A DNA stretch of 64,000 bases from the IMG/VR virus record IMGVR_UViG_3300045999_010033, positions 62,001-126,000 of that record; one strand, 5' to 3'. The translations under genes were made by a program, and so were the position numbers. The notes beneath the pieces are model-generated. The model worked only from the letters and a program-made list of their open reading frames with translations, did no database searches and had not been told where the DNA came from. Positions 33,653 through 62,739 of this stretch are shown here, piece after piece. Each line of letters begins with the position of its first letter. Within the stretch, counting starts at the first letter, position 1.

Positions 33653-34513
33653 TTATTTTCCATCACAATGCTTACCAAAAAATTCACACCATTCACATAA
33701 TTTAGATGGTTTCTTTGGATACGTAATATCGGTTCTTCTATTTCCATTTTCATCAAAGACGGTATTTACAAAATCCATAAACCCGGCCCAAGCTCTATTA
33801 ACACTTGGCTTACCATTGGCAGGAACATGCTTTGATACTCTTGGAATTGGATATTCAGTATCCGCCGGTATTTTTCTTTTTAAGATAATAAATTCAACAT
33901 CTATCATATCTTGCGATACGCTAAATAACTCCGAGTAGAATTTTTTGTAAATTAATATTTGTGAATTTTTAACTTCATCTTTTTTGTGGTAAGAAGACCA
34001 TCCTTTTGTAGATGTTTTGAAATCTATTATACGATACTTACCATTAAATGAATCCTTAATAACCAAATCAATAAACCCGATAAAATTTACATTATCTTTT
34101 ACCTTTGTATTTAGGGGTTGCTCTATGGCTATTACTTCATCATATTTTAAATCAAAAAATTTGTTGAAGTGTTTTGATTTTTGAAATTGTTCTAAAATAA
34201 GAATACCATCGTTTAGATGCTCAACCAATTCATCTTTTGTGCAAATATCTTCTTTACACTTTTCAGATTCTTTCTGATATCCATCTCGCATCTTTTCTGT
34301 AAGTAATTGTTTCAAATTCATAGAACGGTCTGCCTGCGATTTCGATAATCGCAAGCAGACGTCTATGTAAGATTGAAGCACTTCGTGCATTGCCGTTCCG
34401 AATATTAGGCTTACATTGGATTTAGATTCCGAAAGTTCATCTATGTAATTTAACTTATACTGATTCGGACAATTTTTCCAAGTTGAATATTGGGAAAACG
34501 AAACTCGTGCCAC
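33653..34513 (-). CDS. Cas4/AddB-like PD-(D/E)XK exonuclease
   Basis: WKNCP, FGTAMHE, GFIDLV, IIDFKT, QILIY, CEWC...C (four-Cys Fe-S pattern). Confidence 0.88.
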   Translation of the reverse strand: MARVSFSQYSTWKNCPNQYKLNYIDELSESKSNVSLIFGTAMHEVLQSYIDVCLRLSKSQADRSMNLKQLLTEKMRDGYQKESEKCKEDICTKDELVEHLNDGILILEQFQKSKHFNKFFDLKYDEVIAIEQPLNTKVKDNVNFIGFIDLVIKDSFNGKYRIIDFKTSTKGWSSYHKKDEVKNSQILIYKKFYSELFSVSQDMIDVEFIILKRKIPADTEYPIPRVSKHVPANGKPSVNRAWAGFMDFVNTVFDENGNRRTDITYPKKPSKLCEWCEFFGKHCDGK

Positions 34514-34962
34514 TATACTTTAAGTTTTAATTTAGTTATTAATTTTTTCTCTATACCATATCTCTCACAAATGTACTTGATGTTTTCACGTCCTTCTTTG
34601 GTAGAATATAAAATATCCAAATAGTCATTTGCTTGGTTTATTGAACATTGATATTCACGTACAATCAACTCAACTATAAAATCTTCGTAGCTTGATTCTT
34701 TTTTACCTTTAACATAATTCAAAAAGTATTTTCCTTTTGGAATTACATTAATATAAACTTTATACATATCCTGCGGACGAAGTGTTTGAGTTAAAGGTAA
34801 AAGCGTTGCTACCAATTCTACCCAATCGGGGTTCATTGAAAGGAACCTGTTAATCATAAAGTTCGACCAACTCTTTAAGTCCTCATCAGCCAGCTTATCA
34901 AAGTAATTTGGGTCTTGCTCTGAAGTTATGGCTTTGATATGTTCAAACAAAGATTTCGCCAT
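34513..34962 (-). CDS. gp62: clamp loader small subunit (T4 gp62-like)
   Basis: LFEHIKAI, FMINRFLS, YQCS...A.DY; next to gp44. Confidence 0.75.
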   Translation of the reverse strand: MAKSLFEHIKAITSEQDPNYFDKLADEDLKSWSNFMINRFLSMNPDWVELVATLLPLTQTLRPQDMYKVYINVIPKGKYFLNYVKGKKESSYEDFIVELIVREYQCSINQANDYLDILYSTKEGRENIKYICERYGIEKKLITKLKLKV

Positions 34963-35459: not shown

Positions 35460-36407
35460 TTATTTTATAATATTAAGTATTTGAATCATAGTAGATGCAA
35501 ATACAATTTCTTTGTCCACTACCAAAGCATCTTTCGACATCCCATCTGCTATGGTTAGAATAACATTAGCCGTATTGCCTGCAGCATATTCATCAACTTT
35601 ATCATAAAGCATAGTATAGATTTCCGAATAATCATTTAGTTTATTATCTGCAACTGCTTGTCTTATTGACATGAACATATTACGTTTGTCCAAATCTGAT
35701 TTAAGAATCTCTACTAATTTTGTCTGAAAGTTTGATTCCACCATTATTTGGTGGTCTACTTTCAATTCACCTCTTGCCGATTGAAGTTGGCATGTATTAG
35801 TTATCTTACGAATATCGGGATAGTATGAATTGATAATATCAACCAAATTCTTTGGGTCAAATTTAATACCTTCTGCATTTAGAATATTAGACATTTGTAC
35901 TGCCACATCCTTTTTAGTCGGAGGAGTTATTGCGAAAGATTGACACCGGCTTTGAATCGGGTCAATAATTTTCTCAATGTAATTACACGTCAAAATGAAT
36001 CGGCAATGCTTACTGAATGTTTCCATTAGGTTACGAAGGATTGCCTGCGCGTTTGGAGTCATATAATCAAACTCATCAAGTATAATCACTTTGAATCCTG
36101 CGAATCCAACGGACGATGCAAAATTCTTTACTTTTGTTCTTACCGTCTCCACATTGTTTTCATCCGAAGCGTTTATAATCATACTATCACATTTAATAGT
36201 ATTAACAATCAGCTTTGCCAATGTGGTCTTACCGGTGCCCGGTTTTCCATAGAAAAGCAGATGTGGAATATCATTGGCAGTAAGATAATGCTGTATTGTT
36301 TCTTTTACCATTTGATTACCTACGTACTCCGAAAGGTTTGTAGGACGGTATTTTTCACACCAAAGACTGTGTTCTCTTTTATTTATATCATTTGCGAAAA
36401 AACTCAT
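35460..36407 (-). CDS. gp44: clamp loader AAA+ subunit (T4 gp44/RFC-like)
   Basis: EKYRP, GKPGTGKTT, INASD, LDEFD, SRC. Confidence 0.95.
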   Translation of the reverse strand: MSFFANDINKREHSLWCEKYRPTNLSEYVGNQMVKETIQHYLTANDIPHLLFYGKPGTGKTTLAKLIVNTIKCDSMIINASDENNVETVRTKVKNFASSVGFAGFKVIILDEFDYMTPNAQAILRNLMETFSKHCRFILTCNYIEKIIDPIQSRCQSFAITPPTKKDVAVQMSNILNAEGIKFDPKNLVDIINSYYPDIRKITNTCQLQSARGELKVDHQIMVESNFQTKLVEILKSDLDKRNMFMSIRQAVADNKLNDYSEIYTMLYDKVDEYAAGNTANVILTIADGMSKDALVVDKEIVFASTMIQILNIIK

Positions 36408-37890: not shown

Positions 37891-37920
37891 CAATATAAGG
37901 AAAATTTATCAAAATTCAAA
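37891..37920 (-). promoter_or_regulatory. Bacteroidota sigma-type promoter
   Basis: TTTG-N19-TATATTG. Confidence 0.65.
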
Positions 37921-40461
37921 AAATTTCTTAGCCTTTTGCGTTTCAGGAGTTGGTTTCGTCCATTTTAGTGCGTTATAGAAATCATCAATTTTATTATCCA
38001 ATTCTGCTTTATAAATACCCTCTCTATCAATATAGTTGGTTATAAAATCCATTATCTCCTGCGGGTCATTATAATCTCTAAAAGCCACTGCTTCGAGCCC
38101 TAATGGGTTTGTTTTAAGGTACACCCACTTAACTTTATCACCATCACGTATTGGTTCGTGTTTGAATGGGCAGTTGAAAAATTTAAGAAGTCTATTGTAG
38201 GATATTCCTGCTTTTACGTGAGCAGGTGTTCCTTTTTCAAAGTTTGCTACCGTATCTCCTTTTTTCCATCCGGCATCATATTTACTCAATTCTTTAACTG
38301 CTCCACCTTTTGCTATTTTATTTACAGGAACATTGATTAGGTTTTTTTTAAACTCCATAAGTTCACCATCAATATGTTCTTTGGACTTACCCATTAGGAT
38401 TTCTTTTAACATCTTTGCCATAAAATCCTGAAACGCTTTCGGAAACGATGAACGAACCACATCCAATCCTTTAACATCAAGTTTATCACATTTGATTCCA
38501 TTTTTTAGAACCATCCATTGAGCGTAACGTTTCTTTGCTACCCAAAATCCAGCCTTACTAATATATTCCTTTTTAATTTCGAAGCGATGCTTTTCTTTTG
38601 GAATGAAAAAGAATTTCTCTGCAAATATATCGTAAAACTTATTTAGGAATGCCTGCGTTTCTTCTGCAACGGTATTGACTTCTTGTGCCATCCTTTGTTC
38701 ATCAAACTCTTTGTATTCTGGATATCTATGTTTAATCAATGGCTCTGCCATCATATAGATAGAGTCGGTATCAATATAAACATTGTAATCATCTTTTGTT
38801 CCGAGTTCTTTCCAATATTTGATGTTTGCCATTTCCGCCGTTTTCTTAATAACAGTTTGGCCCGTAACAGTAACTGCCTCCGCATTATCAATATCGTAAA
38901 ACCGAAAGGCAGGAAGACCAAGAACACCATACATAGAATTAAGAAGGATTTTCTGAACCAGCTGCCTTTTAGCATAAAATTCATATTTTTCCGTATCGCC
39001 CGCATCACCATACTGCTTTTCTAATTTTCTAAATTCAACACGTTTTTCAAACCAGTCATTTAGAATATCTGCAATAAGGCCCGGTGAATCTTGAGAGTAT
39101 AGAACTCCATTTGCAGCAACACCTAAATTACCATCTATAATTACTTCATTTAATTCTTTTCTATTGTATTCATATTGGCTACCATCTTTTCCAACTAATT
39201 TATAAATCTGGTCTTCACCTTTAATCCATTTCTCTGGATTCCAATTTTGAATTTTACCAACCTTTGTTTCGGGGCTGATATTTAGTGTCATAATGATTGA
39301 TGGGTACAGAGATGTCAAATCCAAGTCATAAATCCAGTCATACTTACCAACGATGGGTTCTTTAACATATGCTCCAATGAACTTTTCCTCATTATTATCT
39401 CGTAGTGCTTGCATCCTTTCTTTTCGGTCCTTTGGTTTGTTGGATGCAACCAGCCCTTTCTTTTTAAGATAAGCAAGACAAGCACCTTCCAACCACTTTG
39501 ATGAAAATATGTAATCTTCATATGGGACAAATCCTGCATGACATACTGCCCTACACAATTCAATGAACTGAAGTTTTTCATCCATTGCTACAATCAATTC
39601 TACATCCACAATGTTATACTCAATAAACTTTTCCAAATCCTTTTCAAAAAGCTCATCAAGATTGCCACCATATTCTACCTTACCTCTGCCAATTTCTTTT
39701 TTAGCTATATAATCCAAAGTGTAACTCGGTTCAAGTGTGTATGTGTAGGTTTTATATAGATTAAGATAATCTAATATATTCACCCCACCGAATGAATACT
39801 TTTGTCTATAAGGTGACCAAAAACATTGACCGATATGTGATAATCTATCTGCGTTTTGTTTACCACAAACGTTTTTAATTCGATTGTAAAGATATGGTAC
39901 ATCAAAAAAATCTATGTTCCAACCAGTTATGATCGTTGGACAAACTTCCTCGTAATAATTAAGGAAAGCAAGTAGGAGATTTTTCTCGTTATCAAAAACG
40001 TGGACGTTAGCCGCCTTATCATTTCTAACAAATTTTTTATTATCATTTTTTATAATTCGGTTTTTATCTAACACAAAAACATCATATTCACCTGCCATTG
40101 AATCGTGTGCGGCAATTGATGTTATTTCATTCATCGCTTGTTCGGTAGAAGGTAATCCCGTATTCATTTCAACTTCAATATCAAACGCCATTATCCGATG
40201 GCCGGTAGAAGGTAAATCCGAATCGTAAATATCTACAAGCACTCTAGTGGTTTCGGGAATATCCGCCTCAAAAAGTTCATCGGTATCATCTTTATCCCAA
40301 CTATGGATACGCGTTAATCTATCACCATACATTGAAAGGTGTTGCCCACGTGGGTCTTTTCTGTATGCATATTTTCTATATGGCATAGTAAAATACCCTT
40401 TTTGGTCATCCCAAATATGCATTGTATTTTTATGACGTTCGTAATATATATTTTGATACAT
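37909..40461 (-). CDS. gp43: family B DNA polymerase with 3'-5' exonuclease
   Basis: FDIE, GWNIDFFD, YNIVD; DLTSLYPS, KILLNSMYG, YIDTDS; C-terminal KKFFEF. Confidence 0.97.
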   Translation of the reverse strand: MYQNIYYERHKNTMHIWDDQKGYFTMPYRKYAYRKDPRGQHLSMYGDRLTRIHSWDKDDTDELFEADIPETTRVLVDIYDSDLPSTGHRIMAFDIEVEMNTGLPSTEQAMNEITSIAAHDSMAGEYDVFVLDKNRIIKNDNKKFVRNDKAANVHVFDNEKNLLLAFLNYYEEVCPTIITGWNIDFFDVPYLYNRIKNVCGKQNADRLSHIGQCFWSPYRQKYSFGGVNILDYLNLYKTYTYTLEPSYTLDYIAKKEIGRGKVEYGGNLDELFEKDLEKFIEYNIVDVELIVAMDEKLQFIELCRAVCHAGFVPYEDYIFSSKWLEGACLAYLKKKGLVASNKPKDRKERMQALRDNNEEKFIGAYVKEPIVGKYDWIYDLDLTSLYPSIIMTLNISPETKVGKIQNWNPEKWIKGEDQIYKLVGKDGSQYEYNRKELNEVIIDGNLGVAANGVLYSQDSPGLIADILNDWFEKRVEFRKLEKQYGDAGDTEKYEFYAKRQLVQKILLNSMYGVLGLPAFRFYDIDNAEAVTVTGQTVIKKTAEMANIKYWKELGTKDDYNVYIDTDSIYMMAEPLIKHRYPEYKEFDEQRMAQEVNTVAEETQAFLNKFYDIFAEKFFFIPKEKHRFEIKKEYISKAGFWVAKKRYAQWMVLKNGIKCDKLDVKGLDVVRSSFPKAFQDFMAKMLKEILMGKSKEHIDGELMEFKKNLINVPVNKIAKGGAVKELSKYDAGWKKGDTVANFEKGTPAHVKAGISYNRLLKFFNCPFKHEPIRDGDKVKWVYLKTNPLGLEAVAFRDYNDPQEIMDFITNYIDREGIYKAELDNKIDDFYNALKWTKPTPETQKAKKFFEF

Positions 40462-45205: not shown

Positions 45206-45210
45206 TTTGT

Positions 45211-46782: not shown

Positions 46783-46798
46783 GTTGATTAATTATAAT

Positions 46799-46830
46799 TA
46801 AATATATGATTTATTATTGTATTTTACAAA
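46799..46830 (-). promoter_or_regulatory. Bacteroidota sigma-type promoter for the MTase-TS-AsnB-PLP operon
   Basis: TTTG-N20-TATATTTA. Confidence 0.65.
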
Positions 46831-48576: not shown

Positions 48577-49459
<883 letters not shown>

Positions 49460-51475: not shown

Positions 51476-52534
51476 TTACACTTTCTTATCAAAAACAAAT
51501 ATGGGCTCCAATTTAATTCCATTACCCGAAACCGATGATAACACCAAATACAAAATATCAGTTTTAATAAATCCCACCGCTTCTGCCATGTTGATTGTTT
51601 CTGCTTCAATACCAACATATTTGGGTGTATTTGCAATATTTATCATCATTTTTCCGGTAGGTTTTAATCCTTTATGACAATTTATCATGGTTTGTTTTAA
51701 GAACCCATTCATCCAATCCCTTTGATTTGGAAATTTTTTATATGACTGTGTATCTTCATCCGAATACTTTTCAGTATCAAAATACGGTGGAGATGTGAAG
51801 CATAAATCTAAACTCTCGGTATCGGGTACAAATTCTTCAGATCCAATTTTATGCAGTAATATCTGCTTATTAAAGAGGTTTAATTCATCTCGTAGTGATA
51901 CTAACCCTTCGTATGTTTTAGTTGAAGGATCAGTTCCTATATAGGTTTTACATCTACTTGTAAGAAATCCTGTCAATCTGCCACCCCATCCACAACTCAT
52001 ATCCCAAACAATCTCACCACCATAGGTATTATATATCCATTTAGCCACCGATGGTCTGAAATTACTGACGGACTGGTTTCCTCCATATATCTTAAAATTT
52101 TGCCTCAATCGATTTAAGGTAAATTTTCCATTACCATGTTTCAATTGCCAAGTCCAAGTTTTTTTAATTATTTCTTTTAATTTATCATCATTGTTCCAAT
52201 ATTCAATCGGTTTCATTTTACTTGAACCACATATAACATCAACCCAATGTGGAAAATAAGACCAAGCAAGAGATAGACAGTGCATGGTTTGCTGTAATTG
52301 ATTCCCCTTACAAATAGTAGATTCATCAAACGAAATCAAAGATTTTAGTTGATTCAGTTTTTCATGCTTTGGTACATTGTAGTGTGGAAATCCTCTACGC
52401 CTATGATATCTAAATATCACATCTTCTGCGTAATCCCTATCGGTTATAGAAAATATATCCGATATGATTCGGTGATATTCCAATTCCAATTCATCAACAT
52501 CCACAAATTTTGAAAAAGCAGTGTAGTTTATCAT
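51476..52534 (-). CDS. amino-group DNA methyltransferase-like protein (SPPY)
   Basis: NFRP, WDMSCGWGGR, FTSPPYF..EKYS, INIAN, EPIF. Confidence 0.85.
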   Translation of the reverse strand: MINYTAFSKFVDVDELELEYHRIISDIFSITDRDYAEDVIFRYHRRRGFPHYNVPKHEKLNQLKSLISFDESTICKGNQLQQTMHCLSLAWSYFPHWVDVICGSSKMKPIEYWNNDDKLKEIIKKTWTWQLKHGNGKFTLNRLRQNFKIYGGNQSVSNFRPSVAKWIYNTYGGEIVWDMSCGWGGRLTGFLTSRCKTYIGTDPSTKTYEGLVSLRDELNLFNKQILLHKIGSEEFVPDTESLDLCFTSPPYFDTEKYSDEDTQSYKKFPNQRDWMNGFLKQTMINCHKGLKPTGKMMINIANTPKYVGIEAETINMAEAVGFIKTDILYLVLSSVSGNGIKLEPIFVFDKKV

Positions 52535-53892
52535 TAACCCATGTTTTCTACGTACTTCTTATGCAGTAGTTTTTTCTCTAACGCCTCTCCACTTTTACTT
52601 TCCTTTGTTGCGATGATACCATTTGGCGAGTTTTCGGCGTAAACTTCCATAAGACCGTGATATGTATCAATTTTCGCAGGGAATGTTATTCCATCTGGTC
52701 CAAATCGATTCTTAACAATATGGATACGACCTGTCTGCGATAGTTTATCTTTTGTCTTACGGCTTACACTCATAATGAAATCCGCAGTTTGCACTTTCTT
52801 ATATGAGTCACCTACACTATCCGCTTGAATTACTTCGTGGTCTATTGCCGACCTATTCGTTTGTGTAGCGGTCCAAATGGGACAACCTACCATGCCACTC
52901 AATCCACGAAGCTCCTCGTAAATACCTCCTAATTCGGCGTAGAGTCCATCCTTACTTCTATCTGCGGAATTAAGTAAATCAGCATAATCAATGATAATTA
53001 CATCGGGATTAAAACCGGTTGCTTTAACTTTATCAATATGAGCAGATAATGTTTTAGCGGAAGCAAATCGTGGTGGATAATATTTAATCCTAACCCGTCC
53101 TTTGACGGATTTAATCTTACGTATTATTTCTTCTCGCTTTTGTGAATGTTCAGATGTCTGAATTCCGGTAATAATTGTTGTATATCTTTGTCCTACATAA
53201 TTTTCGGATAATTCCAAGGTGTAATGTAATACATTTAATCCAATTTTAGCAGCTGAGCACGCTATCTTTGATAAAAACCAACTTTTACCGATACCGGATG
53301 GCGCCATTACCACCCCCAACTCGCCTGGTCCTAATCCACCATCCATAAGGTCATCGACAACTTCCCATCCAGTAGGAACTGAATTTCGTTTGACCTCCTC
53401 AATGATGGATTCAAATTCCTCAATGTAATCTATACCCAAATCATTTTCAATTCCAACTTTTGATGCAGCCGTCATTGTATCAATGATTTTTTCATATTGA
53501 CCGGTTTTAAGATAATCCACCGATTTTAAAAGTGCATCTTTTATTTTTTGGTTTTTAGCAAAAGTTATAAACTCTTTTTTAACATAGGGCAGGTCTTCTG
53601 CACCAATGTTTTGATAAATGTTTCGTAGTTGGTCTACAACTGTTTGTTTTAGGATGCGGTCTTCAATTGTATCCACTTTTATTTTGAATACTTCCAATGT
53701 GGGGCACGTTCTAAACTCATTAAAATAATTGAGTACTTCCGTTACAATCCACCGATTTGCATCCGATTCAAAAAAAGATGGGTTAGTTATTTCGGAAATC
53801 TGCTCTAAAAATTTACAATCAGTAACTAGCGAAGTAACCACTTTTGTTTGATACGATGTTCCGTATTTTACTAGCGTATCTACTGCTTCCAT
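52534..53892 (-). CDS. gp41: replicative helicase (DnaB/T4 gp41-like)
   Basis: APSGIGKS, YTLEL, IIDYADLL, TATQTNR, KNRFG. Confidence 0.95.
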   Translation of the reverse strand: MEAVDTLVKYGTSYQTKVVTSLVTDCKFLEQISEITNPSFFESDANRWIVTEVLNYFNEFRTCPTLEVFKIKVDTIEDRILKQTVVDQLRNIYQNIGAEDLPYVKKEFITFAKNQKIKDALLKSVDYLKTGQYEKIIDTMTAASKVGIENDLGIDYIEEFESIIEEVKRNSVPTGWEVVDDLMDGGLGPGELGVVMAPSGIGKSWFLSKIACSAAKIGLNVLHYTLELSENYVGQRYTTIITGIQTSEHSQKREEIIRKIKSVKGRVRIKYYPPRFASAKTLSAHIDKVKATGFNPDVIIIDYADLLNSADRSKDGLYAELGGIYEELRGLSGMVGCPIWTATQTNRSAIDHEVIQADSVGDSYKKVQTADFIMSVSRKTKDKLSQTGRIHIVKNRFGPDGITFPAKIDTYHGLMEVYAENSPNGIIATKESKSGEALEKKLLHKKYVENMG

Positions 53893-54115: not shown

Positions 54116-55180
54116 TTAATTGTATCTGTTTAAATTACTAAATGTGCTGTTTAACCAATCGGTTACGTTACCGAAAGAATCAAGTATTTTGTATTTCATA
54201 CCGGTTTTCATAAACTCAAATCGGTCAAATCTTGGTGTTTCATCGTTCCATTGATCAACTATTTTAAGTTTTAGTTGTCCACTAAATTCCAATTCGGATA
54301 ATGACATCAATCTACGATTTCTTTCGCAAATATCCAAATTAGAAAGAAAGTTTGTATGTGCGGAAGTTTGTTTGGGCTGATTTTTTACCCAATCCGCCAA
54401 TTGTTCAATCGTAAAATGAATTTCTTCGGTAAGTGGTTTGAAGTTTTTAATGATGGTTTTTATACCTAATCCCTTAACGCCGGATATACTATCCGATGCA
54501 TCTCCATCCATTATTCTAAAATTGATAAAATTATGAGGGTGAATACCAAACTCATCAACTACTTCGGATATAGTGTAAATTTTTTTCTTCGTTGGTGAAT
54601 AAACCTGAATATTCTTTTTAACTAATTGAAGAAAATCTTTATCAGACGACATGATTTGTAGACTCATATCTTCTTTAATAATTTCAGTTGCTATATAACC
54701 AATAACATCATCTGCCTCAATACCATCGTACATCATTACGGTAACAGGTAAGGTTGTCAAGATATCTCCCAAAGCGGCGATTTGTCTACGTAAAGAAATT
54801 TGTTCATCTTCCCGATTCATCATATCAGTATACGCTCGGTTTAGACGTAGTTTATTTTTGGCTCTATCTTCTTTGTATGATGAATAAATTTTCTGTCGGT
54901 TTTTTGCACCACCTTTACCATCAAATACGACTATTACACGTGTTGGATTGAGAGTACGAATAGCATAGCCGATACTCTTTAGAGTACCGACTATACCACC
55001 AATATGGTCACCATCATCGTTTAAGTTAGGAGCAGTAGACCAAGAACGAATAAATGTGTTCAGCCCATCAATAATTAGAACCTTTGAGTTCCTATGATAG
55101 TTTCCTGATTCGGTATGTTCTCTATCTATTTCGTTGAGTATATCTAAATACTTTTTCTTAATCTGACTCATATGCTTCAT
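54116..55180 (-). CDS. rnh: 5'-3' exonuclease / RNase H (FEN family)
   Basis: IIDGLN, VFDG, YK..R, EADD, SSDKDFLQL, GDASD.I.GVKGLG.KT. Confidence 0.93.
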   Translation of the reverse strand: MKHMSQIKKKYLDILNEIDREHTESGNYHRNSKVLIIDGLNTFIRSWSTAPNLNDDGDHIGGIVGTLKSIGYAIRTLNPTRVIVVFDGKGGAKNRQKIYSSYKEDRAKNKLRLNRAYTDMMNREDEQISLRRQIAALGDILTTLPVTVMMYDGIEADDVIGYIATEIIKEDMSLQIMSSDKDFLQLVKKNIQVYSPTKKKIYTISEVVDEFGIHPHNFINFRIMDGDASDSISGVKGLGIKTIIKNFKPLTEEIHFTIEQLADWVKNQPKQTSAHTNFLSNLDICERNRRLMSLSELEFSGQLKLKIVDQWNDETPRFDRFEFMKTGMKYKILDSFGNVTDWLNSTFSNLNRYN

Positions 55181-56276
55181 CCGTTGTTATTTCAACTTCC
55201 TCTGATGCTGAACTTTTGTATTTTAAAATTGTTGCTTCGCAAATTCTGCGATATATTTGGTCTTTCAAATCTGAATTTCCATCTAATAATTCGGAAAAAT
55301 CTTTTGATTGAAACTTCATAACCTCACCACTATCGGTATCAATGTATTCGTACCACGCTCCACCCTGCTTTACTAATTTATTTTCTTTCATAGATTCTAA
55401 CCAACTACCATAGTTATCAATTCCTCTATCAAAATAGATAGTAAAGTCGGCGTGTCTAAGTGGTGGCCCTAATCGGTTTTTTATAACTTGTGCTCTTACT
55501 TTAATACCTACTATCTTTTCAGAACCTTTTGGCCCAGCTTTTACCTGCCCCATTGATTTTAATCTCAATCTAACAGATGAATGGAATGCAAGTGCCTTTC
55601 CACCCGAAGTGGTCCAAGGGTCTGAAAACGCCATTGCGTTCATCTTTTGACGTAATTGATTAGTGAATACTAAACAAATACTTTGTCTGCCAATCATATT
55701 AGTAATCTTTCTCATTGCTTTAGAGATAATGATTGCTTTGTCTGTAGCATATCCATCTTTGTCGTAATCTGCTTCAAGCTCTTTTTTGGTAGATGCCGCG
55801 GCAACTGAATCTACAACGATAGTTACTAATCTATTTTTATCCGATGTTCTAATTTTTTCAATGATTGTTTCACATGCTTCAAATATCGCTTCAACTGTAT
55901 CAACTGATACATAAAGTAATTTTGAAATATCAATACCAATCGCTTCTAAAAATTCCCTATTTACTGCCGTTTCCGTATCAATAAGAACAGCAACTCCACC
56001 TTTCTTTTGGGTCTCTGCTAGCAGATGGGCAGAGAGCAGAGATTTTCCACTCTGCTCTAAGCCAGTTAATTCTGCTATACGGCCGACAGGTAATCCACCA
56101 TACGGACGGTTTGAGATTGCAACATCTAACAGAGCATTTCCCGTAGATAACCAATCTTTAACATTTGTAGGAGCATCACCCCCATCATCTGTCAGAAAGT
56201 ATGCAATTCTACCGTCTTTATTGGATTTGTTGAGTGAATCGGCAAGTACGCTTGCCAAATCTTCTTGTCTAGCCAT
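55158..56276 (-). CDS. uvsX: RecA/UvsX recombinase
   Basis: GGLPVGR, GLEQSGKS, DTE, VDSVAA, FTNQLR, GGKALAFHSSVRL, GGAWY. Confidence 0.95.
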   Translation of the reverse strand: MARQEDLASVLADSLNKSNKDGRIAYFLTDDGGDAPTNVKDWLSTGNALLDVAISNRPYGGLPVGRIAELTGLEQSGKSLLSAHLLAETQKKGGVAVLIDTETAVNREFLEAIGIDISKLLYVSVDTVEAIFEACETIIEKIRTSDKNRLVTIVVDSVAAASTKKELEADYDKDGYATDKAIIISKAMRKITNMIGRQSICLVFTNQLRQKMNAMAFSDPWTTSGGKALAFHSSVRLRLKSMGQVKAGPKGSEKIVGIKVRAQVIKNRLGPPLRHADFTIYFDRGIDNYGSWLESMKENKLVKQGGAWYEYIDTDSGEVMKFQSKDFSELLDGNSDLKDQIYRRICEATILKYKSSASEEVEITTDEAYESD

Positions 56277-56291
56277 AAATGTAACCAATTA

Positions 56292-57122
56292 TTAATTAAA
56301 TAAATCATCAAATGCCGATGCTACTTCATCCTTTACGGATTGTGTCTTTTGTGCGGGCTTTTCCCAAGGGAGGTCACCTGGTCCTTCATCTTCTTCATCT
56401 GAAGTTTTCTGATTTCTTTTAGAAGATGGACTTGCCAATTCACCTACTACATTAGATGCCACTGCAGATTGCTTTTCGGAAGATGGATTCAACCAATTCT
56501 CAAGAACGGATTTAAGTTCCGTATAAGACATTTCCTCATAAAGTTCAGTAATATCTTTTTGTTCTTGTAGAGCCTTTTTTACAATATCGACATCTTCTGA
56601 AATTTTTGATTGCTTTGGTTTAATACGAATAGTAGTGGTTGGGTAAGTTTTACCTACTTCTTGCGAAACTTCAAGCACAATATCACGACCATTCAATGGG
56701 TCAGTAATATCACCATAATCGGGGTCAGCGATGTATGCCAAAATGTCCTGATAAACAGTCTTACCAAATCCCCAAAACTTTACTCCTTCGTGCTCTTTAC
56801 CACGAACGATAACCGGCGCAAATGTACGAAGCTTTGGCTCCATATTCTTACCTGCTTTCCAATCATCCTTGTCGCCAGTACGTTTAAGTTTATCTGCAAA
56901 CTCAACGATTGGGTCAGGTCTACCGAAAGATACTGGACTCAGATAACTCTTGTTGTTAATGTTGTAGTGGAAAAAGAGTTCAATAAAAGGATTGTCTTTG
57001 TTGAACTTGTAAGGAACGATACGAATGATTGATTGTCCTTTTTCGGGTTTCCAAATGAAATCTGATTTTTTTGTGTTGTTTTGAAGCGATTGAAAACGCT
57101 TGAGGGCCAATGAAATGTCCAT
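56292..57122 (-). CDS. gp32: single-stranded DNA-binding protein (T4 gp32-like)
   Basis: WKP..G...IRIVP, DITDP..GRD, acidic tail ending FDDLFN. Confidence 0.88.
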   Translation of the reverse strand: MDISLALKRFQSLQNNTKKSDFIWKPEKGQSIIRIVPYKFNKDNPFIELFFHYNINNKSYLSPVSFGRPDPIVEFADKLKRTGDKDDWKAGKNMEPKLRTFAPVIVRGKEHEGVKFWGFGKTVYQDILAYIADPDYGDITDPLNGRDIVLEVSQEVGKTYPTTTIRIKPKQSKISEDVDIVKKALQEQKDITELYEEMSYTELKSVLENWLNPSSEKQSAVASNVVGELASPSSKRNQKTSDEEDEGPGDLPWEKPAQKTQSVKDEVASAFDDLFN

Positions 57123-58104: not shown

Positions 58105-58135
58105 CAATTATACAAAAAATATTTTACAATTCAAA
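58105..58135 (-). promoter_or_regulatory. Bacteroidota sigma-type promoter, probably leaderless transcript
   Basis: TTTG-N19-TATAATTG-TGTT-ATG. Confidence 0.6.
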
Positions 58136-58531
58136 ATTATCAATCCTAATATTTTTAAATACCTTTGTTGGTATCTTTTTGTATCCACTTTGTGATGTTG
58201 TAAGTATACAGTTTTTAAACTCATCCCAATCTATTATGAATGTGGTATCCAATTGCCCTCCAGTTTTGGATTTAACTACCTCGTTGAGTGCATTTATAGT
58301 GTATATAGTATTAGATTGCTTCTTTCTATGCACCAATATAGTTTTCCATTCTGAATCAATTGCACCTGATCCACGTTCTACATTAAATGTAATAAATAAA
58401 TCTGAAGGTTTTATACGACTTTCTAATATAAAAATATTTGGGTTTGTTAGTTTATAGTTTCCTATAATGAAATTATAAGAACTTTCTAATACCTCCTTTG
58501 TCGTAAATAGGCAAAGTAATTGTGTGTTCAT
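58124..58531 (-). CDS. phage hypothetical protein
   Basis: 135-aa ORF; LLCLFT, VHRKKQSNTIYTINALN. Confidence 0.7.
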   Translation of the reverse strand: MNTQLLCLFTTKEVLESSYNFIIGNYKLTNPNIFILESRIKPSDLFITFNVERGSGAIDSEWKTILVHRKKQSNTIYTINALNEVVKSKTGGQLDTTFIIDWDEFKNCILTTSQSGYKKIPTKVFKNIRIDNFEL

Positions 58532-61044
58532 GTATTATTTTTTGAATCAAAACATTCTTGCATTTCTTCTGACCACGCTAATGTATTTGCAGTTTTTGCT
58601 TGTGGTCCTTGTTTGGGTCTGAATACTTTTGGTGATATTTCTCTACGTTTACCTTCTTTATCAACTAAATAGATAGCAATCGTTTTACCTGTTATAAAAC
58701 CTTGTTCGTTTTTAATAAATTTATCAGTACTAAAATCAACAACGAAGTTTTTTTCTAAATCTTTAAGATTTGTTACACCTAAACATTCTCGTATTGTTTT
58801 TGGAGATACACGTATACCTTCCATTGTAAGATTTGTACTTCTCTTTAAAATTTGATGAAAATCTCCATCATCTTTTGGTAACTCTATTTTATCCAAATGT
58901 AAAGCAGATACTACATCTCTAAATCCTAATGCAGCGGCGGCGGTTGTTGTATCACCTGACATAGTTCTAGCAGGTATTTTACTTAATTTTTCAAAAATAC
59001 CTCTTTGGGCATCAAACGCTTGCTTTCTCATACTTTCTAAAGCGGCTTGAGTATCCAACGTTTTAGGCATTTTTTGTCCAGATGATTTTAATCTTTCTCT
59101 CTCCGATACCGCTACTCTATCTATAATTTTTCGTTCATTATCACTAACAACACTTGGCATTTTTATTTGAACATTGTTTAATATTCTAAATGAACTTAGA
59201 GATTTAATAGATGCTTTATTTTTTTTATCTACTAACCATTCATTATTAAACCATTTCATGTATTCATCTCTACCTTTTTTTCCGGCATCTATTGCTTTTA
59301 ATATTTGTTTTTTTGTGTTACCATCTAAATCCGGATTTTTTAATAAAGTTGCTACATCATCTTCTTCGTATTTGTCAAGTACATCTTCTATAAATTGATC
59401 AGCAGCTAACTCATCTTTTGATTTTTTTCTTTTTACACCACATATTTCTTCAGCTATGGTAACATTTTTTGCAGTTGATTTTCCTTGTCCTGCCGCAACT
59501 GCATCTACATTTTCTTTCCATTTTTTATAGTGTTTTTTGGTATCGGAATTATTAGCCGCAGTTTCCTCTAATTTTTTGAAATCGTTTTCCGGTAGACTTA
59601 AATGATATTTGGAATGATTACTTGATATCGTACTATATCCTTTCTCAATTAATTTAATTTCATTTGCTCCATCATCTATAATTTGTCTTGATTTTGTTGC
59701 ATCTGCATCTTTGATTTGCCCACCTTTTATCATTTCATCTACTCTTAACCCGGATTGTACCATATCATTATATAATGTTCCGTTTGCTTGTAAATCTGCT
59801 AACGTTTTTTTATCACTCCATCCATCATATAATAAATTACCATTTATATCTTTTGTAAGAACGACGGTATCTGCGGCGTTTTCTCCACCACCTGAACTTT
59901 TTATCCAAGTTGTTAAATAATCTTTAGGTACTTTGTATACCTTACCAGTTTCATCATCGTAAATATAACAATTGTTTGCGCTATTTACTTCTGATATCAT
60001 ATTATCTCTATCGGTTTCAACTTCTTTCGGTGTACTTTCTTTTTTAGAAGTTCCACCATATCCGGTCACACTACTAACTTCTCCAAATCCAACTTGTTGT
60101 TTACAAGCAGCCGCACCTGTAGCTGCCCTATCGTATTTTGCTTTTCCACTTCTGGCAGCGATAACACAATTTTTATATAAGATTTGATCTTCTTTTGAAA
60201 AATCTGGTGGTACTTGTATTTTATTTTTAGATTTTATTACAGGATTAGCTTGTTGACTTGCCAATACGGTTCCTTTTGTTTTATTAAAAATGACTCTTGC
60301 CAAAGTTTCTTCATCTAAATTTGGATTAACTTTAAGAATAGAAGTTGCTTCATTAGACATATTTTCGTTAAAATTAGAACCAGCATTGCCGGGCGCTACC
60401 CACCATTCACCTTCAGTATATCCATTTTGTAATGCAGCATCTGATGTTGTTGAATTTTGCAAAAGACGACCTTTGTTATTTTTTCCATATAATTTTTCAG
60501 ATTCTACTCTTGCATCAGATTCTACTTTTGTCCAATTTATTTCTTTTTTTGATTTTTGATTTTTTTCTTTCTTTTTTTCCGGTTCAGAAAATACCGACGC
60601 TCCTTTTCCGGTTTTTCCAAAGACATTCGTAGTCTTAGGTTTAGGTTTTTCTTCATCCTCCGGCTCGGCATCTACAATTTCAATATCTTTTGAGGAAAAA
60701 TTCTTTGACGTTAATCTAGCCATAGCCGGCTTATATGCAGGGTGTGTTTTTCCATATCCTAACGCAGTGGAAATTTGTATATCTTCACCTGTTTTTGGAT
60801 TTTTAATTTTTTGTTTCAATAAATTTTCAAGTTCTTTTTGCCTTTTTGCATCATATTCTTGCTTTTCTTGCAATTGTAAGAAGTACACTGCTACTTTTTC
60901 TGATATTTCTTTTGAATTACTTACTCCACTACGTTTGAGTAATTCTTGTAATTTATCAACTTGATCCTTTTTAGTTAAATCAACAATTCCATTTTTTGAA
61001 TGGTATTCCAATTCGGAAAGTATTTTATCAATATTTTTAACCAT
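58528..61044 (-). CDS. large hypothetical protein, possibly head-packaged
   Basis: 838 aa; KIKNPKTG motif; possible nuclease-like E...ADTV...SDKK pattern; downstream of late-like motif. Confidence 0.7.
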   Translation of the reverse strand: MVKNIDKILSELEYHSKNGIVDLTKKDQVDKLQELLKRSGVSNSKEISEKVAVYFLQLQEKQEYDAKRQKELENLLKQKIKNPKTGEDIQISTALGYGKTHPAYKPAMARLTSKNFSSKDIEIVDAEPEDEEKPKPKTTNVFGKTGKGASVFSEPEKKKEKNQKSKKEINWTKVESDARVESEKLYGKNNKGRLLQNSTTSDAALQNGYTEGEWWVAPGNAGSNFNENMSNEATSILKVNPNLDEETLARVIFNKTKGTVLASQQANPVIKSKNKIQVPPDFSKEDQILYKNCVIAARSGKAKYDRAATGAAACKQQVGFGEVSSVTGYGGTSKKESTPKEVETDRDNMISEVNSANNCYIYDDETGKVYKVPKDYLTTWIKSSGGGENAADTVVLTKDINGNLLYDGWSDKKTLADLQANGTLYNDMVQSGLRVDEMIKGGQIKDADATKSRQIIDDGANEIKLIEKGYSTISSNHSKYHLSLPENDFKKLEETAANNSDTKKHYKKWKENVDAVAAGQGKSTAKNVTIAEEICGVKRKKSKDELAADQFIEDVLDKYEEDDVATLLKNPDLDGNTKKQILKAIDAGKKGRDEYMKWFNNEWLVDKKNKASIKSLSSFRILNNVQIKMPSVVSDNERKIIDRVAVSERERLKSSGQKMPKTLDTQAALESMRKQAFDAQRGIFEKLSKIPARTMSGDTTTAAAALGFRDVVSALHLDKIELPKDDGDFHQILKRSTNLTMEGIRVSPKTIRECLGVTNLKDLEKNFVVDFSTDKFIKNEQGFITGKTIAIYLVDKEGKRREISPKVFRPKQGPQAKTANTLAWSEEMQECFDSKNNT

Positions 61045-61086: not shown

Positions 61087-62328
61087 TTATCCGATTAAAT
61101 CCATTTTATCATAATTAATACCCTCATATATTCTGACAGGGAATCCACCACGATTGAGAGTGCTTGAAATCGTATTAATCAATTTACGTTCATCGAAATG
61201 CAAATCTATTAGAACTGCATCATAAGTATATAATATCAGTTTAGATTTTTTTGTAGAAAGAATATCCATAACATCCTTCAACTTCTTATAGTTCACTTCG
61301 GTTTCCAACGCCTGAAGTAAATAATTGAATACTTTTTGTTGCGATGGTTCTTCTATACGTTTGAAACCGATTCGGCGTTTGAATATTGGTGTTTCAATAT
61401 ATCCTCGTATAACAAAGTCATTCCACATTTTTTCCATCCATTCATTTACTTTCCTAAAGAATGGTATTTCCAACGCTACCGCATCCATACCACCATATAG
61501 GTAACGAAATGTAATACGTTTTGCTTCTTCGTACTCCACATCATAAAGTTCAGCAAAGTATTGGTGTGCGGTTTTATCGGTAGGCAATTCGTAACCTATA
61601 AGTTTTGCAATAAGTCGTATGTGATATGATTCAAAATCCATACTGATTAGTGTACCTCCTTCCCATCTAGAAACGATTCCCGAACGTGTCCCATCCGATT
61701 TGTTCAACGCACCCCAATTAGTTCCTGCGTGTCGATTTGATGGACGACCAGTAATTGTGTATGGATTATACTTTGAATACACTATCCCATTTTCATGTTT
61801 AGTATTAAACTTAATAGGGTCAATATGGATACCGGACATTTCAATTGCACCGAGTGTATTTATGGCTTTTGAATATGGTAAATACCATTCTTGCATTCTA
61901 ACTGGCACCGGTAATGTAGATAATTTTTCCATCCATTTTGTGAGTGGAATACAATCATTTATGTGCGAGTACCCTCTATTTTGATTGTGATATAGAGATT
62001 CACTAAAATCGTTAAACCTGAAGGGAAGTCCCCATTCTTCAAAATATGCCCATTCGTAATCTATTCCACACGTTTGTAAGTAACGATTTCCATATACGAA
62101 TGTATCTAACTTTACCCAATCTGAAATTTCAATCGAAAGACACGTATTGGCATCTATATGATTTTGGTTAATAATATATTCGTTACATTCAGTTCTAACG
62201 TAGTAAAATGATATAGTTGTATTAAGTTCATGTTCAGTAGATGAAGACCATACTGGTACTATTAACTTTATTTTTTCTTTACTATCTGCTAACTGCTGCA
62301 GCTGTGTATTTGATTCAATTAAAAACAT
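61087..62328 (-). CDS. divergent, compact family A DNA polymerase
   Basis: TITGRPS, MDFESYHIR (A), AKRITFRYLYG (B), FNYLLQ, LYTYDAVL (C); start moved to ATG 62328. Confidence 0.85.
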   Translation of the reverse strand: MFLIESNTQLQQLADSKEKIKLIVPVWSSSTEHELNTTISFYYVRTECNEYIINQNHIDANTCLSIEISDWVKLDTFVYGNRYLQTCGIDYEWAYFEEWGLPFRFNDFSESLYHNQNRGYSHINDCIPLTKWMEKLSTLPVPVRMQEWYLPYSKAINTLGAIEMSGIHIDPIKFNTKHENGIVYSKYNPYTITGRPSNRHAGTNWGALNKSDGTRSGIVSRWEGGTLISMDFESYHIRLIAKLIGYELPTDKTAHQYFAELYDVEYEEAKRITFRYLYGGMDAVALEIPFFRKVNEWMEKMWNDFVIRGYIETPIFKRRIGFKRIEEPSQQKVFNYLLQALETEVNYKKLKDVMDILSTKKSKLILYTYDAVLIDLHFDERKLINTISSTLNRGGFPVRIYEGINYDKMDLIG

Positions 62329-62363: not shown

Positions 62364-62738
62364 TTACCCTTTGTGAAACTGTAAAAGGTTTGGCAAATAT
62401 AAGGAAATATTTTTTAATTGAGAACTCGCTATCGATATTGATGATTTGTTTGATGCAATCACACCTCTATCCGATAATTCCCCATCTTTGTATATGGATT
62501 CAGTTGGTCCGGATATTCTCCATTGTATTTGCAATACTTTCCAAAATGGATTTGTTTCATAAATTGTAAATTCATTTTCTGAAACTTCGAATATAAATGA
62601 GTTTTCATCGTTTGCTTTTTGAATGAAAAAACGATTTATAAACCCAATAGAGTAATCATCATCGGTTGGATTTGGTACAATGGTTTTTGGTACTTTTAAA
62701 GTAAAATTTTCAATATTTTTTGCTATATTTTTGTACAT
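62364..62738 (-). CDS. phage hypothetical protein
   Basis: PTDDDY..G...RFF, W.ISGP segments. Confidence 0.7.
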   Translation of the reverse strand: MYKNIAKNIENFTLKVPKTIVPNPTDDDYSIGFINRFFIQKANDENSFIFEVSENEFTIYETNPFWKVLQIQWRISGPTESIYKDGELSDRGVIASNKSSISIASSQLKNISLYLPNLLQFHKG

Positions 62739-62739
62739 A

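What the first reader, a model, noticed from the sequence alone, without database searches (positions are those of the whole stretch)
61087..62328. Second, miniature family A polymerase with altered catalytic motifs
Only about 413 aa, with no clear exonuclease motifs and a much shortened thumb region. Motif A is DFESYHIR (vs DYSQIELR) and motif C is YDA (vs HDE); both catalytic Asp remain. It coexists with a complete PolB replisome. It could serve in priming, gap filling, repair or handling modified nucleotides.
Basis: partly seen in the sequence, partly recalled or inferred. Interest (0 to 1): 0.6.

Follow-up and report, generated by a model that had tools for sequence, protein, structure and literature searches.

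The report
Thumbless mini-PolA (divPolA1) of a phage
A 413-residue, stripped-down relative of DNA polymerase I, with no thumb and no recognisable proofreading site, heads the replication-recombination genes of a 221-kb phage that also has a full T4-type replicase; the class was described from sequence in 2024 (divPolA1), and what it does has never been tested.

Summary
Window 61087..62328 (-) encodes a 413-aa protein whose AlphaFold model (pLDDT 90) matches the Bst, Taq and Klenow large fragments over its whole length (Z 26.6). About 94 thumb residues, 55 residues of the N-terminal part (mostly the exonuclease domain) and 43 palm/fingers residues are missing. Both catalytic Asp (D231, D370) and K270, F274, Y278, R195 and Q339 are invariant in 176 relatives. 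So are three departures from Pol I. The steric-gate Glu is His236. Motif C reads YDA instead of HDE. The O-helix Arg (Klenow R754) has no counterpart.

It is not new as a kind. It belongs to, or is sister to, "divPolA1" (Yutin et al. 2024), first seen in Flavobacterium phage immuto. It shares that family's truncated thumb and its gene order (gp32 SSB, RecA, flap endonuclease, DnaB), and it is likewise encoded beside a regular polymerase, here PolB.

The genome also has clamp-loader subunits and a DnaG-type primase. The most likely role is therefore an accessory, distributive, non-proofreading DNA polymerase that does Pol I-like gap filling or recombination synthesis. Priming and ribonucleotide use are less likely, and none of these roles has been tested. 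A conserved 135-aa neighbour gene is a new lead. Interest is moderate.

The parts
61087..62328 (-). divPolA1-type mini family A DNA polymerase, 413 aa (P0001), stop codon included
   Evidence: ORF. AF2 model pLDDT 90.4, pTM 0.87. VIA Z 26.6 to Bst Pol I large fragment over model residues 1-410. Foldseek E 1.5e-17 to Klenow. 32% identity, E 4e-46, to immuto divPolA1.
61954..62328 (-). N-terminal domain (about residues 1-125): shrunken 3'-5' exonuclease-like domain without recognisable Exo motifs
   Evidence: It is structurally aligned with Bst residues 301 onward. It gives no sequence match to an exonuclease family. The end of strand 1 reads W-S-S where Pol I has D-x-E (my placement, not a residue-level superposition). 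H33, H57 and D90 are invariant in 176 relatives.
61789..61818 (-). Thumb stump: residues 171-180 replace about 102 residues of Pol I (549-652)
   Evidence: Local alignment and hhalign to E. coli Pol I. The model has no helices between residues 165 and 197.
61744..61752 (-). T-G-R motif (T193-G194-R195; R195 = Klenow R668)
   Evidence: Alignments. R195 is kept in 176 of 176 sequences.
61615..61638 (-). Motif A, DFESYHIR: D231 = Klenow D705 (metal ligand); H236 stands where the steric-gate E710 stands; R238 = R712
   Evidence: Ungapped alignments to Taq and Klenow. D231 is kept in 176 of 176 and H236 in 175 of 176 sequences.
61489..61533 (-). O-helix / motif B (residues 266-280): K270, F274, Y278, G279 = Klenow K758, F762, Y766, G767. 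Position 266, or an adjacent gap, stands for R754 and is never a conserved Arg
   Evidence: K, F, Y and G are kept in 176 of 176 sequences. Position 266 is Y, T, A, V or I, with R once.
61216..61224 (-). Motif C, Y369-D370-A371, in place of H881-D882-E883
   Evidence: YDA is found in all 175 sequences that reach this column.
58124..58531 (-). Conserved 135-aa protein of unknown function that travels with divPolA1. It lies immediately downstream of divPolA1 in immuto and Mel-JY01 and is separated from it by a variable large ORF here
   Evidence: blastp: 70% identity to L008, 42% to immuto, 30% to Mel-JY01. Present in every IMG/VR locus with at least about 2.9 kb held downstream of the polymerase gene. 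856 relatives. No family hit. Its fold matches nothing informative.
58528..61044 (-). 838-aa ORF of unknown function inserted between divPolA1 and the 135-aa gene; poorly conserved (25-50% identity) and absent from some relatives
56292..57122 (-). gp32-like single-strand DNA binding protein
   Evidence: Pfam gp32 E 2.4e-17; phrog_1192.
55158..56288 (-). RecA/UvsX-like recombinase
   Evidence: Pfam RecA E 1e-55; phrog_97.
54116..55180 (-). 5'-3' exonuclease / flap endonuclease; its best curated match is the N-terminal domain of bacterial DNA polymerase I
   Evidence: Pfam 5_3_exonuc_N E 5.5e-33. NCBIfam PRK05755 positions 2-253, E 4e-44.
52534..53892 (-). DnaB-like replicative helicase
   Evidence: phrog_19 E 1e-73.
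37909..40461 (-). T4-type family B DNA polymerase, the 'regular' replicase
   Evidence: phrog_262 E 1.7e-179. 48.6% identity to the PolB of Microcystis phage Mel-JY01.
34513..36407 (-). Clamp-loader subunits: large 35460..36407, small 34513..34962
   Evidence: phrog_168 E 3.9e-81 and phrog_225 E 1.4e-18. Pfam AAA and DNA_pol3_delta2.

Best explanation
The gene encodes a member, or close sister clade, of the divPolA1 family. This is a family A DNA polymerase reduced to a compact Klenow-like core: a shrunken N-terminal exonuclease-like domain that appears dead, palm and shortened fingers, and essentially no thumb. It most likely still catalyses template-directed DNA synthesis, but distributively and without proofreading. 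I infer that it is the accessory polymerase of the conserved gp32 SSB - RecA - flap endonuclease - DnaB module. In that reading it fills short gaps after primer removal by the separately encoded Pol I-like flap endonuclease, and/or extends 3' ends in recombination intermediates. Bulk replication would be done by the PolB with its clamp loader, and primers would be made by the DnaG-type primase. Shown here: the fold, the deletions, residue conservation, synteny and the coexistence with a regular polymerase. Inferred: catalytic activity, low processivity and the Pol I-like role.
For: Fold: Z 26.6, 385 of 413 residues aligned to the Bst large fragment; Foldseek E 1.5e-17 to Klenow. Active site: D231, D370, K270, F274, Y278, G279 and R195 are invariant, and Q339, N335 and H255 nearly so, in 176 distinct relatives including immuto and Mel-JY01. 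Thumb: about 94 residues are deleted. Deleting only the thumb tip of Klenow lowers processivity and fidelity (Minnick 1996, as cited in PMC10061031). Family: 32% identity, E 4e-46, to the founding divPolA1 of phage immuto; the published description gives a truncated thumb, all three exonuclease Asp replaced, conserved downstream replication genes and a regular DNAP of family A, B or C alongside (PMC11348598). Synteny: the order divPolA1 ... 135-aa gene - SSB - RecA - FEN - DnaB is found in immuto, Mel-JY01, ENA/JGI contigs and 80 IMG/VR loci. The FEN matches the Pol I N-terminal domain best. So both halves of a Pol I are present as separate genes, and this holds whatever the replicase is: PolB here and in three complete relatives of 202-238 kb, a regular PolA in immuto. 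A dedicated primase and clamp-loader subunits exist. divPolA1 is the least conserved enzyme of the module (about 51% identity, against RecA about 84%, DnaB about 77% and FEN about 62%), which fits an accessory rather than a core role.
Against: There are no biochemical data for any member. Three residues important in Pol I are changed in the whole family: E710 to His, E883 to Ala, and R754 without a counterpart. Activity could therefore be low or of a different kind. T4-type replisomes do not need a second polymerase for Okazaki maturation. The FEN gene and the polymerase gene are separated by several genes, and no physical or regulatory link between them was shown. Yutin et al. leave open that divPolA1 is itself central to replication. 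Invariant H33, H57 and D90 in the supposedly dead N-terminal domain are unexplained.
Confidence: 0.5

Rival explanations
1. It is a de novo initiating polymerase (a DNA primase), like the SCCmec CCPol-MP pair. In that pair a trimmed PolA with a shortened thumb gains dNTP-priming activity from a small DNA-binding partner. Here the partner would be the conserved 135-aa protein or the gp32-like SSB.
For: CCPol is a trimmed PolA with a partial exonuclease domain and a short thumb, and it primes with MP (PMC7581432, PMC10061031). A shorter last thumb helix is proposed there to make room for the initiating triphosphate. Here the thumb is absent. A small, highly conserved protein co-occurs with divPolA1 in every locus with enough downstream sequence held, and lies directly adjacent in immuto and Mel-JY01.
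Against: The genome has its own DnaG-type primase (phrog_47 E 4e-40). The 135-aa protein is not predicted to be an OB fold. Its N-terminal half is a generic ferredoxin-like unit with best Z 6.5, and the model is only medium confidence.
Confidence: 0.12
2. It is the principal replicative polymerase of the conserved SSB-RecA-FEN-DnaB module, and the swappable 'regular' PolA, PolB or PolC has another job.
For: Yutin et al. note that divPolA1 has the conserved replication context, while the regular DNAPs sit in semi-conserved, functionally mixed neighbourhoods and are exchanged between families. The swap is confirmed here: PolB in this clade, a regular PolA in immuto.
Against: It has no proofreading domain motifs and no thumb, which is a poor fit for copying 160-240 kb accurately (inference from Pol I enzymology). 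In this genome PolB lies next to clamp-loader subunits and dNTP-metabolism genes. divPolA1 evolves faster than the other replication enzymes of the module. In the pair with Mel-JY01, PolB is 48.6% identical and divPolA1 34.8%.
Confidence: 0.1
3. It is a polymerase with altered sugar or base selectivity. Because the steric-gate Glu is replaced, it would incorporate ribonucleotides or copy or insert hypermodified nucleotides made by the phage.
For: His236 replaces the steric-gate E710 in 175 of 176 relatives. The Glu of motif C and the Arg of the O-helix are also gone. The window carries a probable DNA-modification cluster: a thymidylate-synthase-like gene, an amidotransferase, methyltransferase-like paralogs and glycosyltransferases.
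Against: His is not small, so it may still exclude a 2'-OH. F274 (F762) and Y278 (Y766), which also act in sugar selection, are kept. The top 50 structural matches in PDB and BFVD are all DNA polymerases, none an RNA polymerase. The family signature is the same in immuto and Mel-JY01, where no shared modification system was established.
Confidence: 0.1
4. It is a catalytically dead polymerase fold kept as a DNA-binding or scaffolding subunit.
For: Pol I residues that matter for rate (E883, R754) are missing. Pfam DNA_pol_A scores below its curated threshold.
Against: Both metal-binding Asp and the nucleotide- and template-contacting K, F, Y, H, N, Q and R residues are invariant or nearly so across more than 170 diverged sequences. 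That pattern is not expected for a pseudo-enzyme.
Confidence: 0.05

Closest known systems
divPolA1 (Yutin et al. 2024, Virol J 21:200; PMC11348598), founding members in Flavobacterium phage vB_FspM_immuto and uncultured freshwater/marine Caudoviricetes
   Same: About 410-440 aa. The PolA palm has its catalytic residues, the thumb is truncated, and there are no exonuclease motifs. It is encoded besides a regular DNAP. The downstream order SSB - RecA - 5'-3' exonuclease - DnaB - RNR is the same. It shares the signatures D-x-x-x-Y-H-x-R, K-x3-F-x3-Y-G and Y-D-A.
   Different: It is only 32% identical to immuto over residues 113-399, and the N-terminal domain does not align by BLAST. The host genome is larger (221 kb against the 155-190 kb reported). 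An 838-aa ORF is inserted after the polymerase gene. No Cpn10 match reached the curated cut-off in this genome, whereas the paper reports chaperonins near the regular DNAP. The paper lists 14 phages; I find more than 2,000 clusters and 365 IMG/VR contigs.
Bacterial DNA polymerase I large fragments (Klenow, Bst BF, Klentaq)
   Same: The whole protein superposes (Z 25-26.6, rmsd 3.5-3.8 A, about 385 residues). The TGR motif and motifs A, B and C are recognisable.
   Different: It is 413 aa against about 580-605 aa. About 94 thumb residues are absent, the part preceding the thumb (mostly the exonuclease domain) is about 55 residues shorter, and palm/fingers about 43 shorter. E710 is His, H881-D882-E883 is Y-D-A, and R754 has no counterpart. 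There is no fused 5'-nuclease; a Pol I-like FEN is a separate gene 6 kb away. Pfam DNA_pol_A scores 17.9 bits, under the 34.3-bit cut-off.
CCPol-MP / PolA-SSB primases of SCCmec and other Bacillota mobile elements (PMC7581432, PMC10061031)
   Same: It is a trimmed PolA with a partial N-terminal exonuclease relic and a shortened thumb. It is encoded near a small conserved protein and a replicative helicase.
   Different: The small neighbour here is not predicted to be an OB fold. The helicase is DnaB-type and several genes away. The genome has its own DnaG-type primase. According to its authors CCPol keeps the two ribonucleotide-discriminating residues, whereas here the steric-gate Glu is His.
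divPolA2 of barbaviruses (same paper)
   Same: It is a second, diverged PolA without a normal thumb or exonuclease, next to a regular PolB.
   Different: divPolA2 has an unrelated N-terminal globular domain, a variable gene context and structural matches to single-subunit RNA polymerases. Here the N-terminal domain aligns with the Pol I exonuclease region, the context is fixed, and only DNA polymerases appear among the top 50 matches.
Split T7-like PolA of phage S-SBP1 (Czernecki et al. 2023, PMC10201439)
   Same: A PolA function is distributed over separate genes.
   Different: In S-SBP1 an active 3'-5' exonuclease gene lies next to the pol gene after a frameshift split. Here the exonuclease relic stays fused, appears dead, and no separate proofreading gene was found beside it.

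Membership tests
divPolA1 (Yutin et al. 2024) | Sequence homology to the founding member (immuto divPolA1) | tested here: met
   BLASTP 32% identity over 316 columns, E 4e-46; tblastn E 5e-38. The motif signatures are shared. The N-terminal 112 residues do not align by BLAST; only H33, H57 and D90 are shared there in the MAFFT alignment.
divPolA1 (Yutin et al. 2024) | Palm domain with the main catalytic residues conserved | tested here: met
   D231 and D370 align with Klenow D705 and D882. D231 is kept in 176 of 176 sequences and D370 in all 175 that reach that column.
divPolA1 (Yutin et al. 2024) | Truncated thumb | tested here: met
   Eight residues span what is 102 residues in E. coli Pol I (549-652). 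The model has no helices there.
divPolA1 (Yutin et al. 2024) | 3'-5' exonuclease domain inactivated (catalytic Asp replaced) | tested here: inconclusive
   No exonuclease family match, and no D-x-E at the end of strand 1, where the sequence reads W-S-S. I had no residue-level superposition, and invariant D59, D90, E92, H33 and H57 exist in the domain. Loss of activity is therefore likely but not shown.
divPolA1 (Yutin et al. 2024) | Encoded in addition to a regular DNA polymerase | tested here: met
   PolB at 37909..40461. No other PolA in the 221-kb genome. Three complete relatives also have PolB, and immuto has a regular PolA.
divPolA1 (Yutin et al. 2024) | Conserved array of replication genes downstream | tested here: met
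   SSB, RecA, FEN and DnaB follow in the same order and on the same strand here and in immuto, Mel-JY01, L008 and 80 IMG/VR loci.
Family A DNA polymerase (Pfam PF00476) | Score above the curated gathering threshold | tested here: not met
   17.9 bits against a cut-off of 34.3, E 0.0016. Some relatives do carry a precomputed PF00476 hit.
Family A DNA polymerase (Klenow fold) | Klenow-like fold with the TGR motif and motifs A, B and C in order | tested here: met
   Z 26.6 over residues 1-410. hhalign probability 93.5% to Klenow over residues 180-408. HMMER profile E 1.3e-6 to Klentaq.
CCPol-MP type PolA primase | Adjacent small OB-fold ssDNA-binding partner that binds the polymerase | tested here: not met
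   The conserved 135-aa neighbour is modelled (pLDDT 67) as a ferredoxin-like unit plus a disordered conserved loop. The best PDB match has Z 6.5, and there is no OB-fold match. Binding itself was not resolved.
CCPol-MP type PolA primase | De novo (primer-independent) synthesis | not testable with these tools
   This needs a biochemical assay.
T7-like single-subunit RNA polymerase | Structural similarity to ssRNAPs, with an N-terminal promoter-binding domain | tested here: not met
   The top 50 PDB and BFVD matches are all DNA polymerases. The protein is 413 aa, and its N-terminal domain aligns with the Pol I exonuclease region.

The most novel reading that the evidence does not exclude
The family-wide replacement of the steric-gate Glu by His, the loss of the motif C Glu and of the O-helix Arg, and the absence of a thumb together mark a changed chemistry. 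The enzyme would be a PolA-derived polymerase that starts chains de novo or uses ribonucleotides or hypermodified nucleotides. It might work with the strictly co-occurring 135-aa protein, whose most conserved segment is disordered on its own, acting as a thumb or DNA clamp supplied in trans.
Probability: 0.15. Interest if true: 0.75.

Novelty: new member of a known kind. Interest (0 to 1): 0.4.

Why it matters
divPolA1 is one of the smallest natural Klenow-fold polymerases that still keeps a complete active site. It is abundant: I found thousands of sequence clusters in aquatic metagenomes, in phages of 160-250 kb. It stays fixed in its gene module while the main replicase is exchanged between polymerase families. 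Learning what a thumbless, proofreading-free PolA contributes to a replisome that already has a polymerase, a primase and a flap endonuclease would clarify how large phages divide replication, maturation and recombination tasks. It could also yield a compact polymerase with unusual substrate tolerance. The residue-level departures and the conserved 135-aa companion gene reported here give concrete mutants and partners to test.

Tried and rejected
1. Complex prediction of divPolA1 with the 135-aa protein gave no verdict: scores 0.01 and 0.00 against a mark of 0.32. This is no evidence for or against binding.
2. Folding and searching the 135-aa protein gave no answer. The model has pLDDT 67, Foldseek PDB found nothing at E <= 0.001, VIA-wide gave a best Z of 6.5 to generic ferredoxin/ACT/RRM-like units, and the Atlas feature search scored below 0.8. 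So the protein has no assignable fold or function, and an OB fold is not supported.
3. The promoter and terminator scan of 57-63 kb found 30 promoter-like sites against 31.2 expected. It found no minus-strand terminator flanking the gene; the only one lies inside the 838-aa ORF. It is therefore uninformative about transcription units.
4. A sliding clamp was not identified. Pfam DNA_PPF gave no hit in the genome. The 237-aa ORF next to PolB matched nothing in the PDB by sequence and only a PHROG of unknown function.
5. Cpn10 scored only 14 bits, inside a 1437-aa frame, which is not a chaperonin. Cpn60 was not searched.
6. An AEP Prim-Pol was not found.
7. PHROGs and NCBIfam gave nothing useful for P0001.
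8. A literature search for Mel-JY01 found no paper.
9. The large representative-protein search was deliberately not run. The word search already gave more than 2,000 relatives, and no claim here rests on an absence of relatives.
11. A residue-level mapping of the exonuclease motifs could not be made, because model coordinates are not exposed to scripts.
Full report
**What is there.** The minus strand of the window carries an open frame from an ATG at 62328 (or a TTG at 62334) to a stop at 61087-61089. Relatives start at the position of the ATG, so the product is 413 aa (P0001). All ORFs of 150 aa or more in the window lie on the same strand, and GC is about 0.33. The window is bases 62001-126000 of a 221,095-bp IMG/VR virus record that CheckV rates complete.

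**Family and fold.** Sequence scans alone are weak:
- Pfam DNA_pol_A scores 17.9 bits, below its 34.3-bit cut-off.
- PHROGs and NCBIfam give nothing useful.
- phmmer against the PDB finds only Klentaq, at about 1e-5.

A profile of 30 relatives aligns residues 180-408 to Taq and to E. coli Klenow (HMMER E 1.3e-6; hhalign probability 93.5%). An AlphaFold2 model built on that alignment is confident (pLDDT 90.4, pTM 0.87). It matches family A polymerases over its whole length. Foldseek gives E 1.5e-17 to Klenow. VIA-align gives Z 26.6, rmsd 3.6-3.8 A, with about 385 of 413 residues aligned to Bst large-fragment residues 301-876. The top 50 matches in the PDB and in the viral model library are all DNA polymerases, and all the viral ones are much longer, except three labelled fragments or partial sequences of 313-433 aa.

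**Anatomy relative to E. coli Pol I** (sequence taken from NC_000913.3).
- P0001 156-171 aligns with Pol I 534-549, and P0001 180 onward aligns with Pol I 652 onward. Eight residues therefore replace 102, so the thumb helices are essentially deleted.
- The part before residue 156 is about 55 residues shorter than Pol I 324-533.
- The palm/fingers part after residue 180 is about 43 residues shorter.
- Together these account for 413 aa against 605 aa.

Residue mapping (ungapped in both alignments around motifs A and C):

| P0001 | Klenow | Note |
|---|---|---|
| R195 | R668 | TGR motif |
| D231 | D705 | catalytic Asp |
| H236 | E710 | steric-gate position |
| R238 | R712 | |
| H255 | H734 | |
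| K270, F274, Y278 | K758, F762, Y766 | O-helix |
| N335, Q339 | N845, Q849 | |
| Y369-D370-A371 | H881-D882-E883 | motif C |

Klenow R754 falls in a gap, or on position 266, which is Tyr here. The functional roles of these Klenow residues are established knowledge (for example Astatke et al. 1998 for E710, cited in PMC10201439). They were not tested here.

**Conservation.** The word search found 2,016 proteins at E <= 0.001 among 90%-identity clusters. The 120 best listed are 413-428 aa long apart from one 296-aa entry, and they lie on contigs of up to 240 kb. An IMG/VR scan found 365 contigs. I aligned 176 distinct sequences, including Flavobacterium phage immuto and Microcystis phage Mel-JY01.
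- D231, K270, F274, Y278, G279 and R195 are invariant.
- D370 and the whole Y-D-A motif are present in all 175 sequences that reach the column.
- H236 is present in 175 of 176.
- Position 266 is Y, T, A, V or I, and R only once.

The odd motifs are signatures of the family, not decay. In the N-terminal domain H33, H57 and D90 are invariant even in the distant members, which I cannot explain.

**This kind is already published.** Yutin et al. 2024 (PMC11348598, section "Two novel phage PolAs") describe divPolA1 in immuto and 13 related phages of 155-190 kb. In their description it:
- is encoded in addition to a regular DNAP of family A, B or C;
- has a palm with its catalytic residues;
- has a truncated thumb;
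- has all three exonuclease Asp replaced;
- is followed by a conserved array of replication genes.

P0001 is 32% identical to the immuto protein (E 4e-46) and shares its motif signatures. The earlier PolA reclassification by Czernecki et al. 2023 does not mention the immuto phages. No experimental work on divPolA1 turned up in the library searched.

**Context.** Downstream on the same strand lie, in order:
- an 838-aa ORF with no family hit;
- a 135-aa ORF;
- two small ORFs;
- a gp32-like SSB;
- RecA/UvsX;
- a 5'-3' exonuclease (FEN);
- a DnaB-like helicase;
- a methyltransferase-like ORF;
- ribonucleotide reductase.

The same order is annotated in immuto (PolA, two hypotheticals, SSB, RecA, 5'-3' exonuclease, DnaB, RNR) and in Mel-JY01. 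It recurs in ENA and JGI contigs and in all 80 IMG/VR loci as far as their sequence reaches. Upstream are tail and baseplate genes.

The FEN matches the N-terminal 5'-nuclease domain of bacterial Pol I better than it matches stand-alone exonucleases (PRK05755 E 4e-44).

The regular polymerase is a T4-type PolB at 37909..40461, with clamp-loader subunits beside it. A DnaG-type primase lies at genome position 195095-196036, next to SbcCD-like genes. There is no AEP primase and no second PolA. A sliding clamp was not identified.

Three complete relatives of 202-238 kb also pair a PolB of about 853 aa with divPolA1. Immuto instead has a regular PolA in a 778-aa frame and no PolB. This reproduces the published swap of the regular polymerase.

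**A new lead.** The 135-aa ORF (58124..58531) has homologs directly downstream of divPolA1 in immuto (42% identity) and in Mel-JY01 (30%). It is present in every locus with at least about 2.9 kb held downstream of the polymerase gene. It has 856 relatives, and the 120 best listed are 72-94% identical, so it is better conserved than the polymerase itself. It has no family match. Its model is of medium confidence, with a ferredoxin-like N-terminal half and a disordered yet highly conserved stretch at residues 83-117. Whether it binds the polymerase is unresolved.

**Mechanism.**
- Shown: a compact Klenow fold with an intact two-Asp active site, no thumb, no recognisable proofreading motifs, a fixed place at the head of an SSB-RecA-FEN-DnaB module, and coexistence with an exchangeable regular replicase and a separate primase.
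- Inferred: it is an active, distributive, non-proofreading DNA polymerase. With the separately encoded Pol I-like FEN it would do the work of a Pol I, namely primer-gap filling and/or extension of recombination intermediates.

Across the same loci, identity to the window is about 51% for divPolA1, against about 84% for RecA, 77% for DnaB, 69% for SSB and 62% for FEN. That fits an accessory enzyme. I put identity as divPolA1-type PolA at about 0.9, polymerase activity at about 0.8 and the Pol I-like role at about 0.4-0.5.

Rivals, with my confidence in each:
- a CCPol-MP-like primase, weakened by the DnaG-type primase and by the partner not being an OB fold: 0.12;
- the main replicase, weakened by the lack of proofreading and of a thumb: 0.10;
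- a polymerase with changed sugar or base selectivity, suggested by His at the steric gate and by a probable DNA-modification cluster in the window: 0.10;
- a dead scaffold, contradicted by active-site invariance: 0.05.

**Verdict.** The object is a new, diverged member of a class published in 2024 that has not been characterised biochemically. What this analysis adds:
- the size of the family;
- the exact extent of the thumb deletion;
- the family-wide His-for-Glu steric gate, Y-D-A motif C and missing O-helix Arg;
- the Pol I-like nature of the companion FEN;
- the strictly co-occurring 135-aa gene.

Noticed in passing
window 30725-33417, 43000-48063, 51476-52534 (all minus strand): A probable DNA-modification gene set lies around the PolB. 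It comprises a thymidylate-synthase-like ORF (44507-45205; 23.7 bits, just under the Pfam cut-off), an asparagine-synthase/glutamine-amidotransferase-like ORF (43000-44505), three paralogous methyltransferase-like ORFs (phrog_12517: 45211-46782, 46831-48063, 51476-52534) and two GT4 glycosyltransferases (30725-32038, 32035-33417). Together they suggest hypermodified bases.
   Followed up: partly
window 58124-58531 (-): This 135-aa protein co-occurs with divPolA1 across distant phages and is better conserved than the polymerase. Its most conserved stretch (residues 83-117) is predicted disordered. It has no family or fold assignment.
   Followed up: yes
window 58528-61044 (-): This 838-aa Lys/Glu-rich ORF has no Pfam, PHROG or NCBIfam hit. 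It is inserted between divPolA1 and the 135-aa gene in this clade only, is 25-50% identical among relatives, and is absent from some.
   Followed up: partly
window 61954-62328 (-), residues H33, H57, D90 of P0001: Two His and one Asp are invariant in all 176 relatives, inside the supposedly dead exonuclease-like domain. They could form a structural or metal site, or a partner interface.
   Followed up: no
window 7124-13749 (-): Two very large ORFs (750 aa at 7124-9376 and 1091 aa at 10474-13749) have no PHROG match. The larger one lies in the GC-richest stretch of the window (0.39-0.40 against about 0.32).
   Followed up: no
window 62364-63999 (-): The two genes upstream of divPolA1 (124 aa, and more than 419 aa running off the window) are conserved in the same position in nearly all related loci. 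In relatives they follow tail-sheath, tail-tube and T4-baseplate genes. The polymerase therefore sits exactly at the junction between the structural and the replication modules.
   Followed up: partly
L013 (IMGVR_UViG_3300044949_001918, 9231 bp): A separate IMG/VR contig is 100% identical in all ten encoded proteins compared (from the upstream 419-aa ORF through the FEN). The same phage was therefore assembled at least twice.
   Followed up: no
genome G000:C1:193713-196036 (outside the window): The DnaG-type primase (313 aa) lies directly beside an SbcD/SbcC-like (gp46/47-type) nuclease gene, about 70 kb from the helicase and the polymerases.
   Followed up: partly
window 33653-34513, 36416-36862, 48577-49335 (-): A PD-(D/E)XK nuclease, a dUTPase and a PhoH-like ATPase are interspersed with the PolB, clamp-loader and RNR genes.
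   Followed up: no
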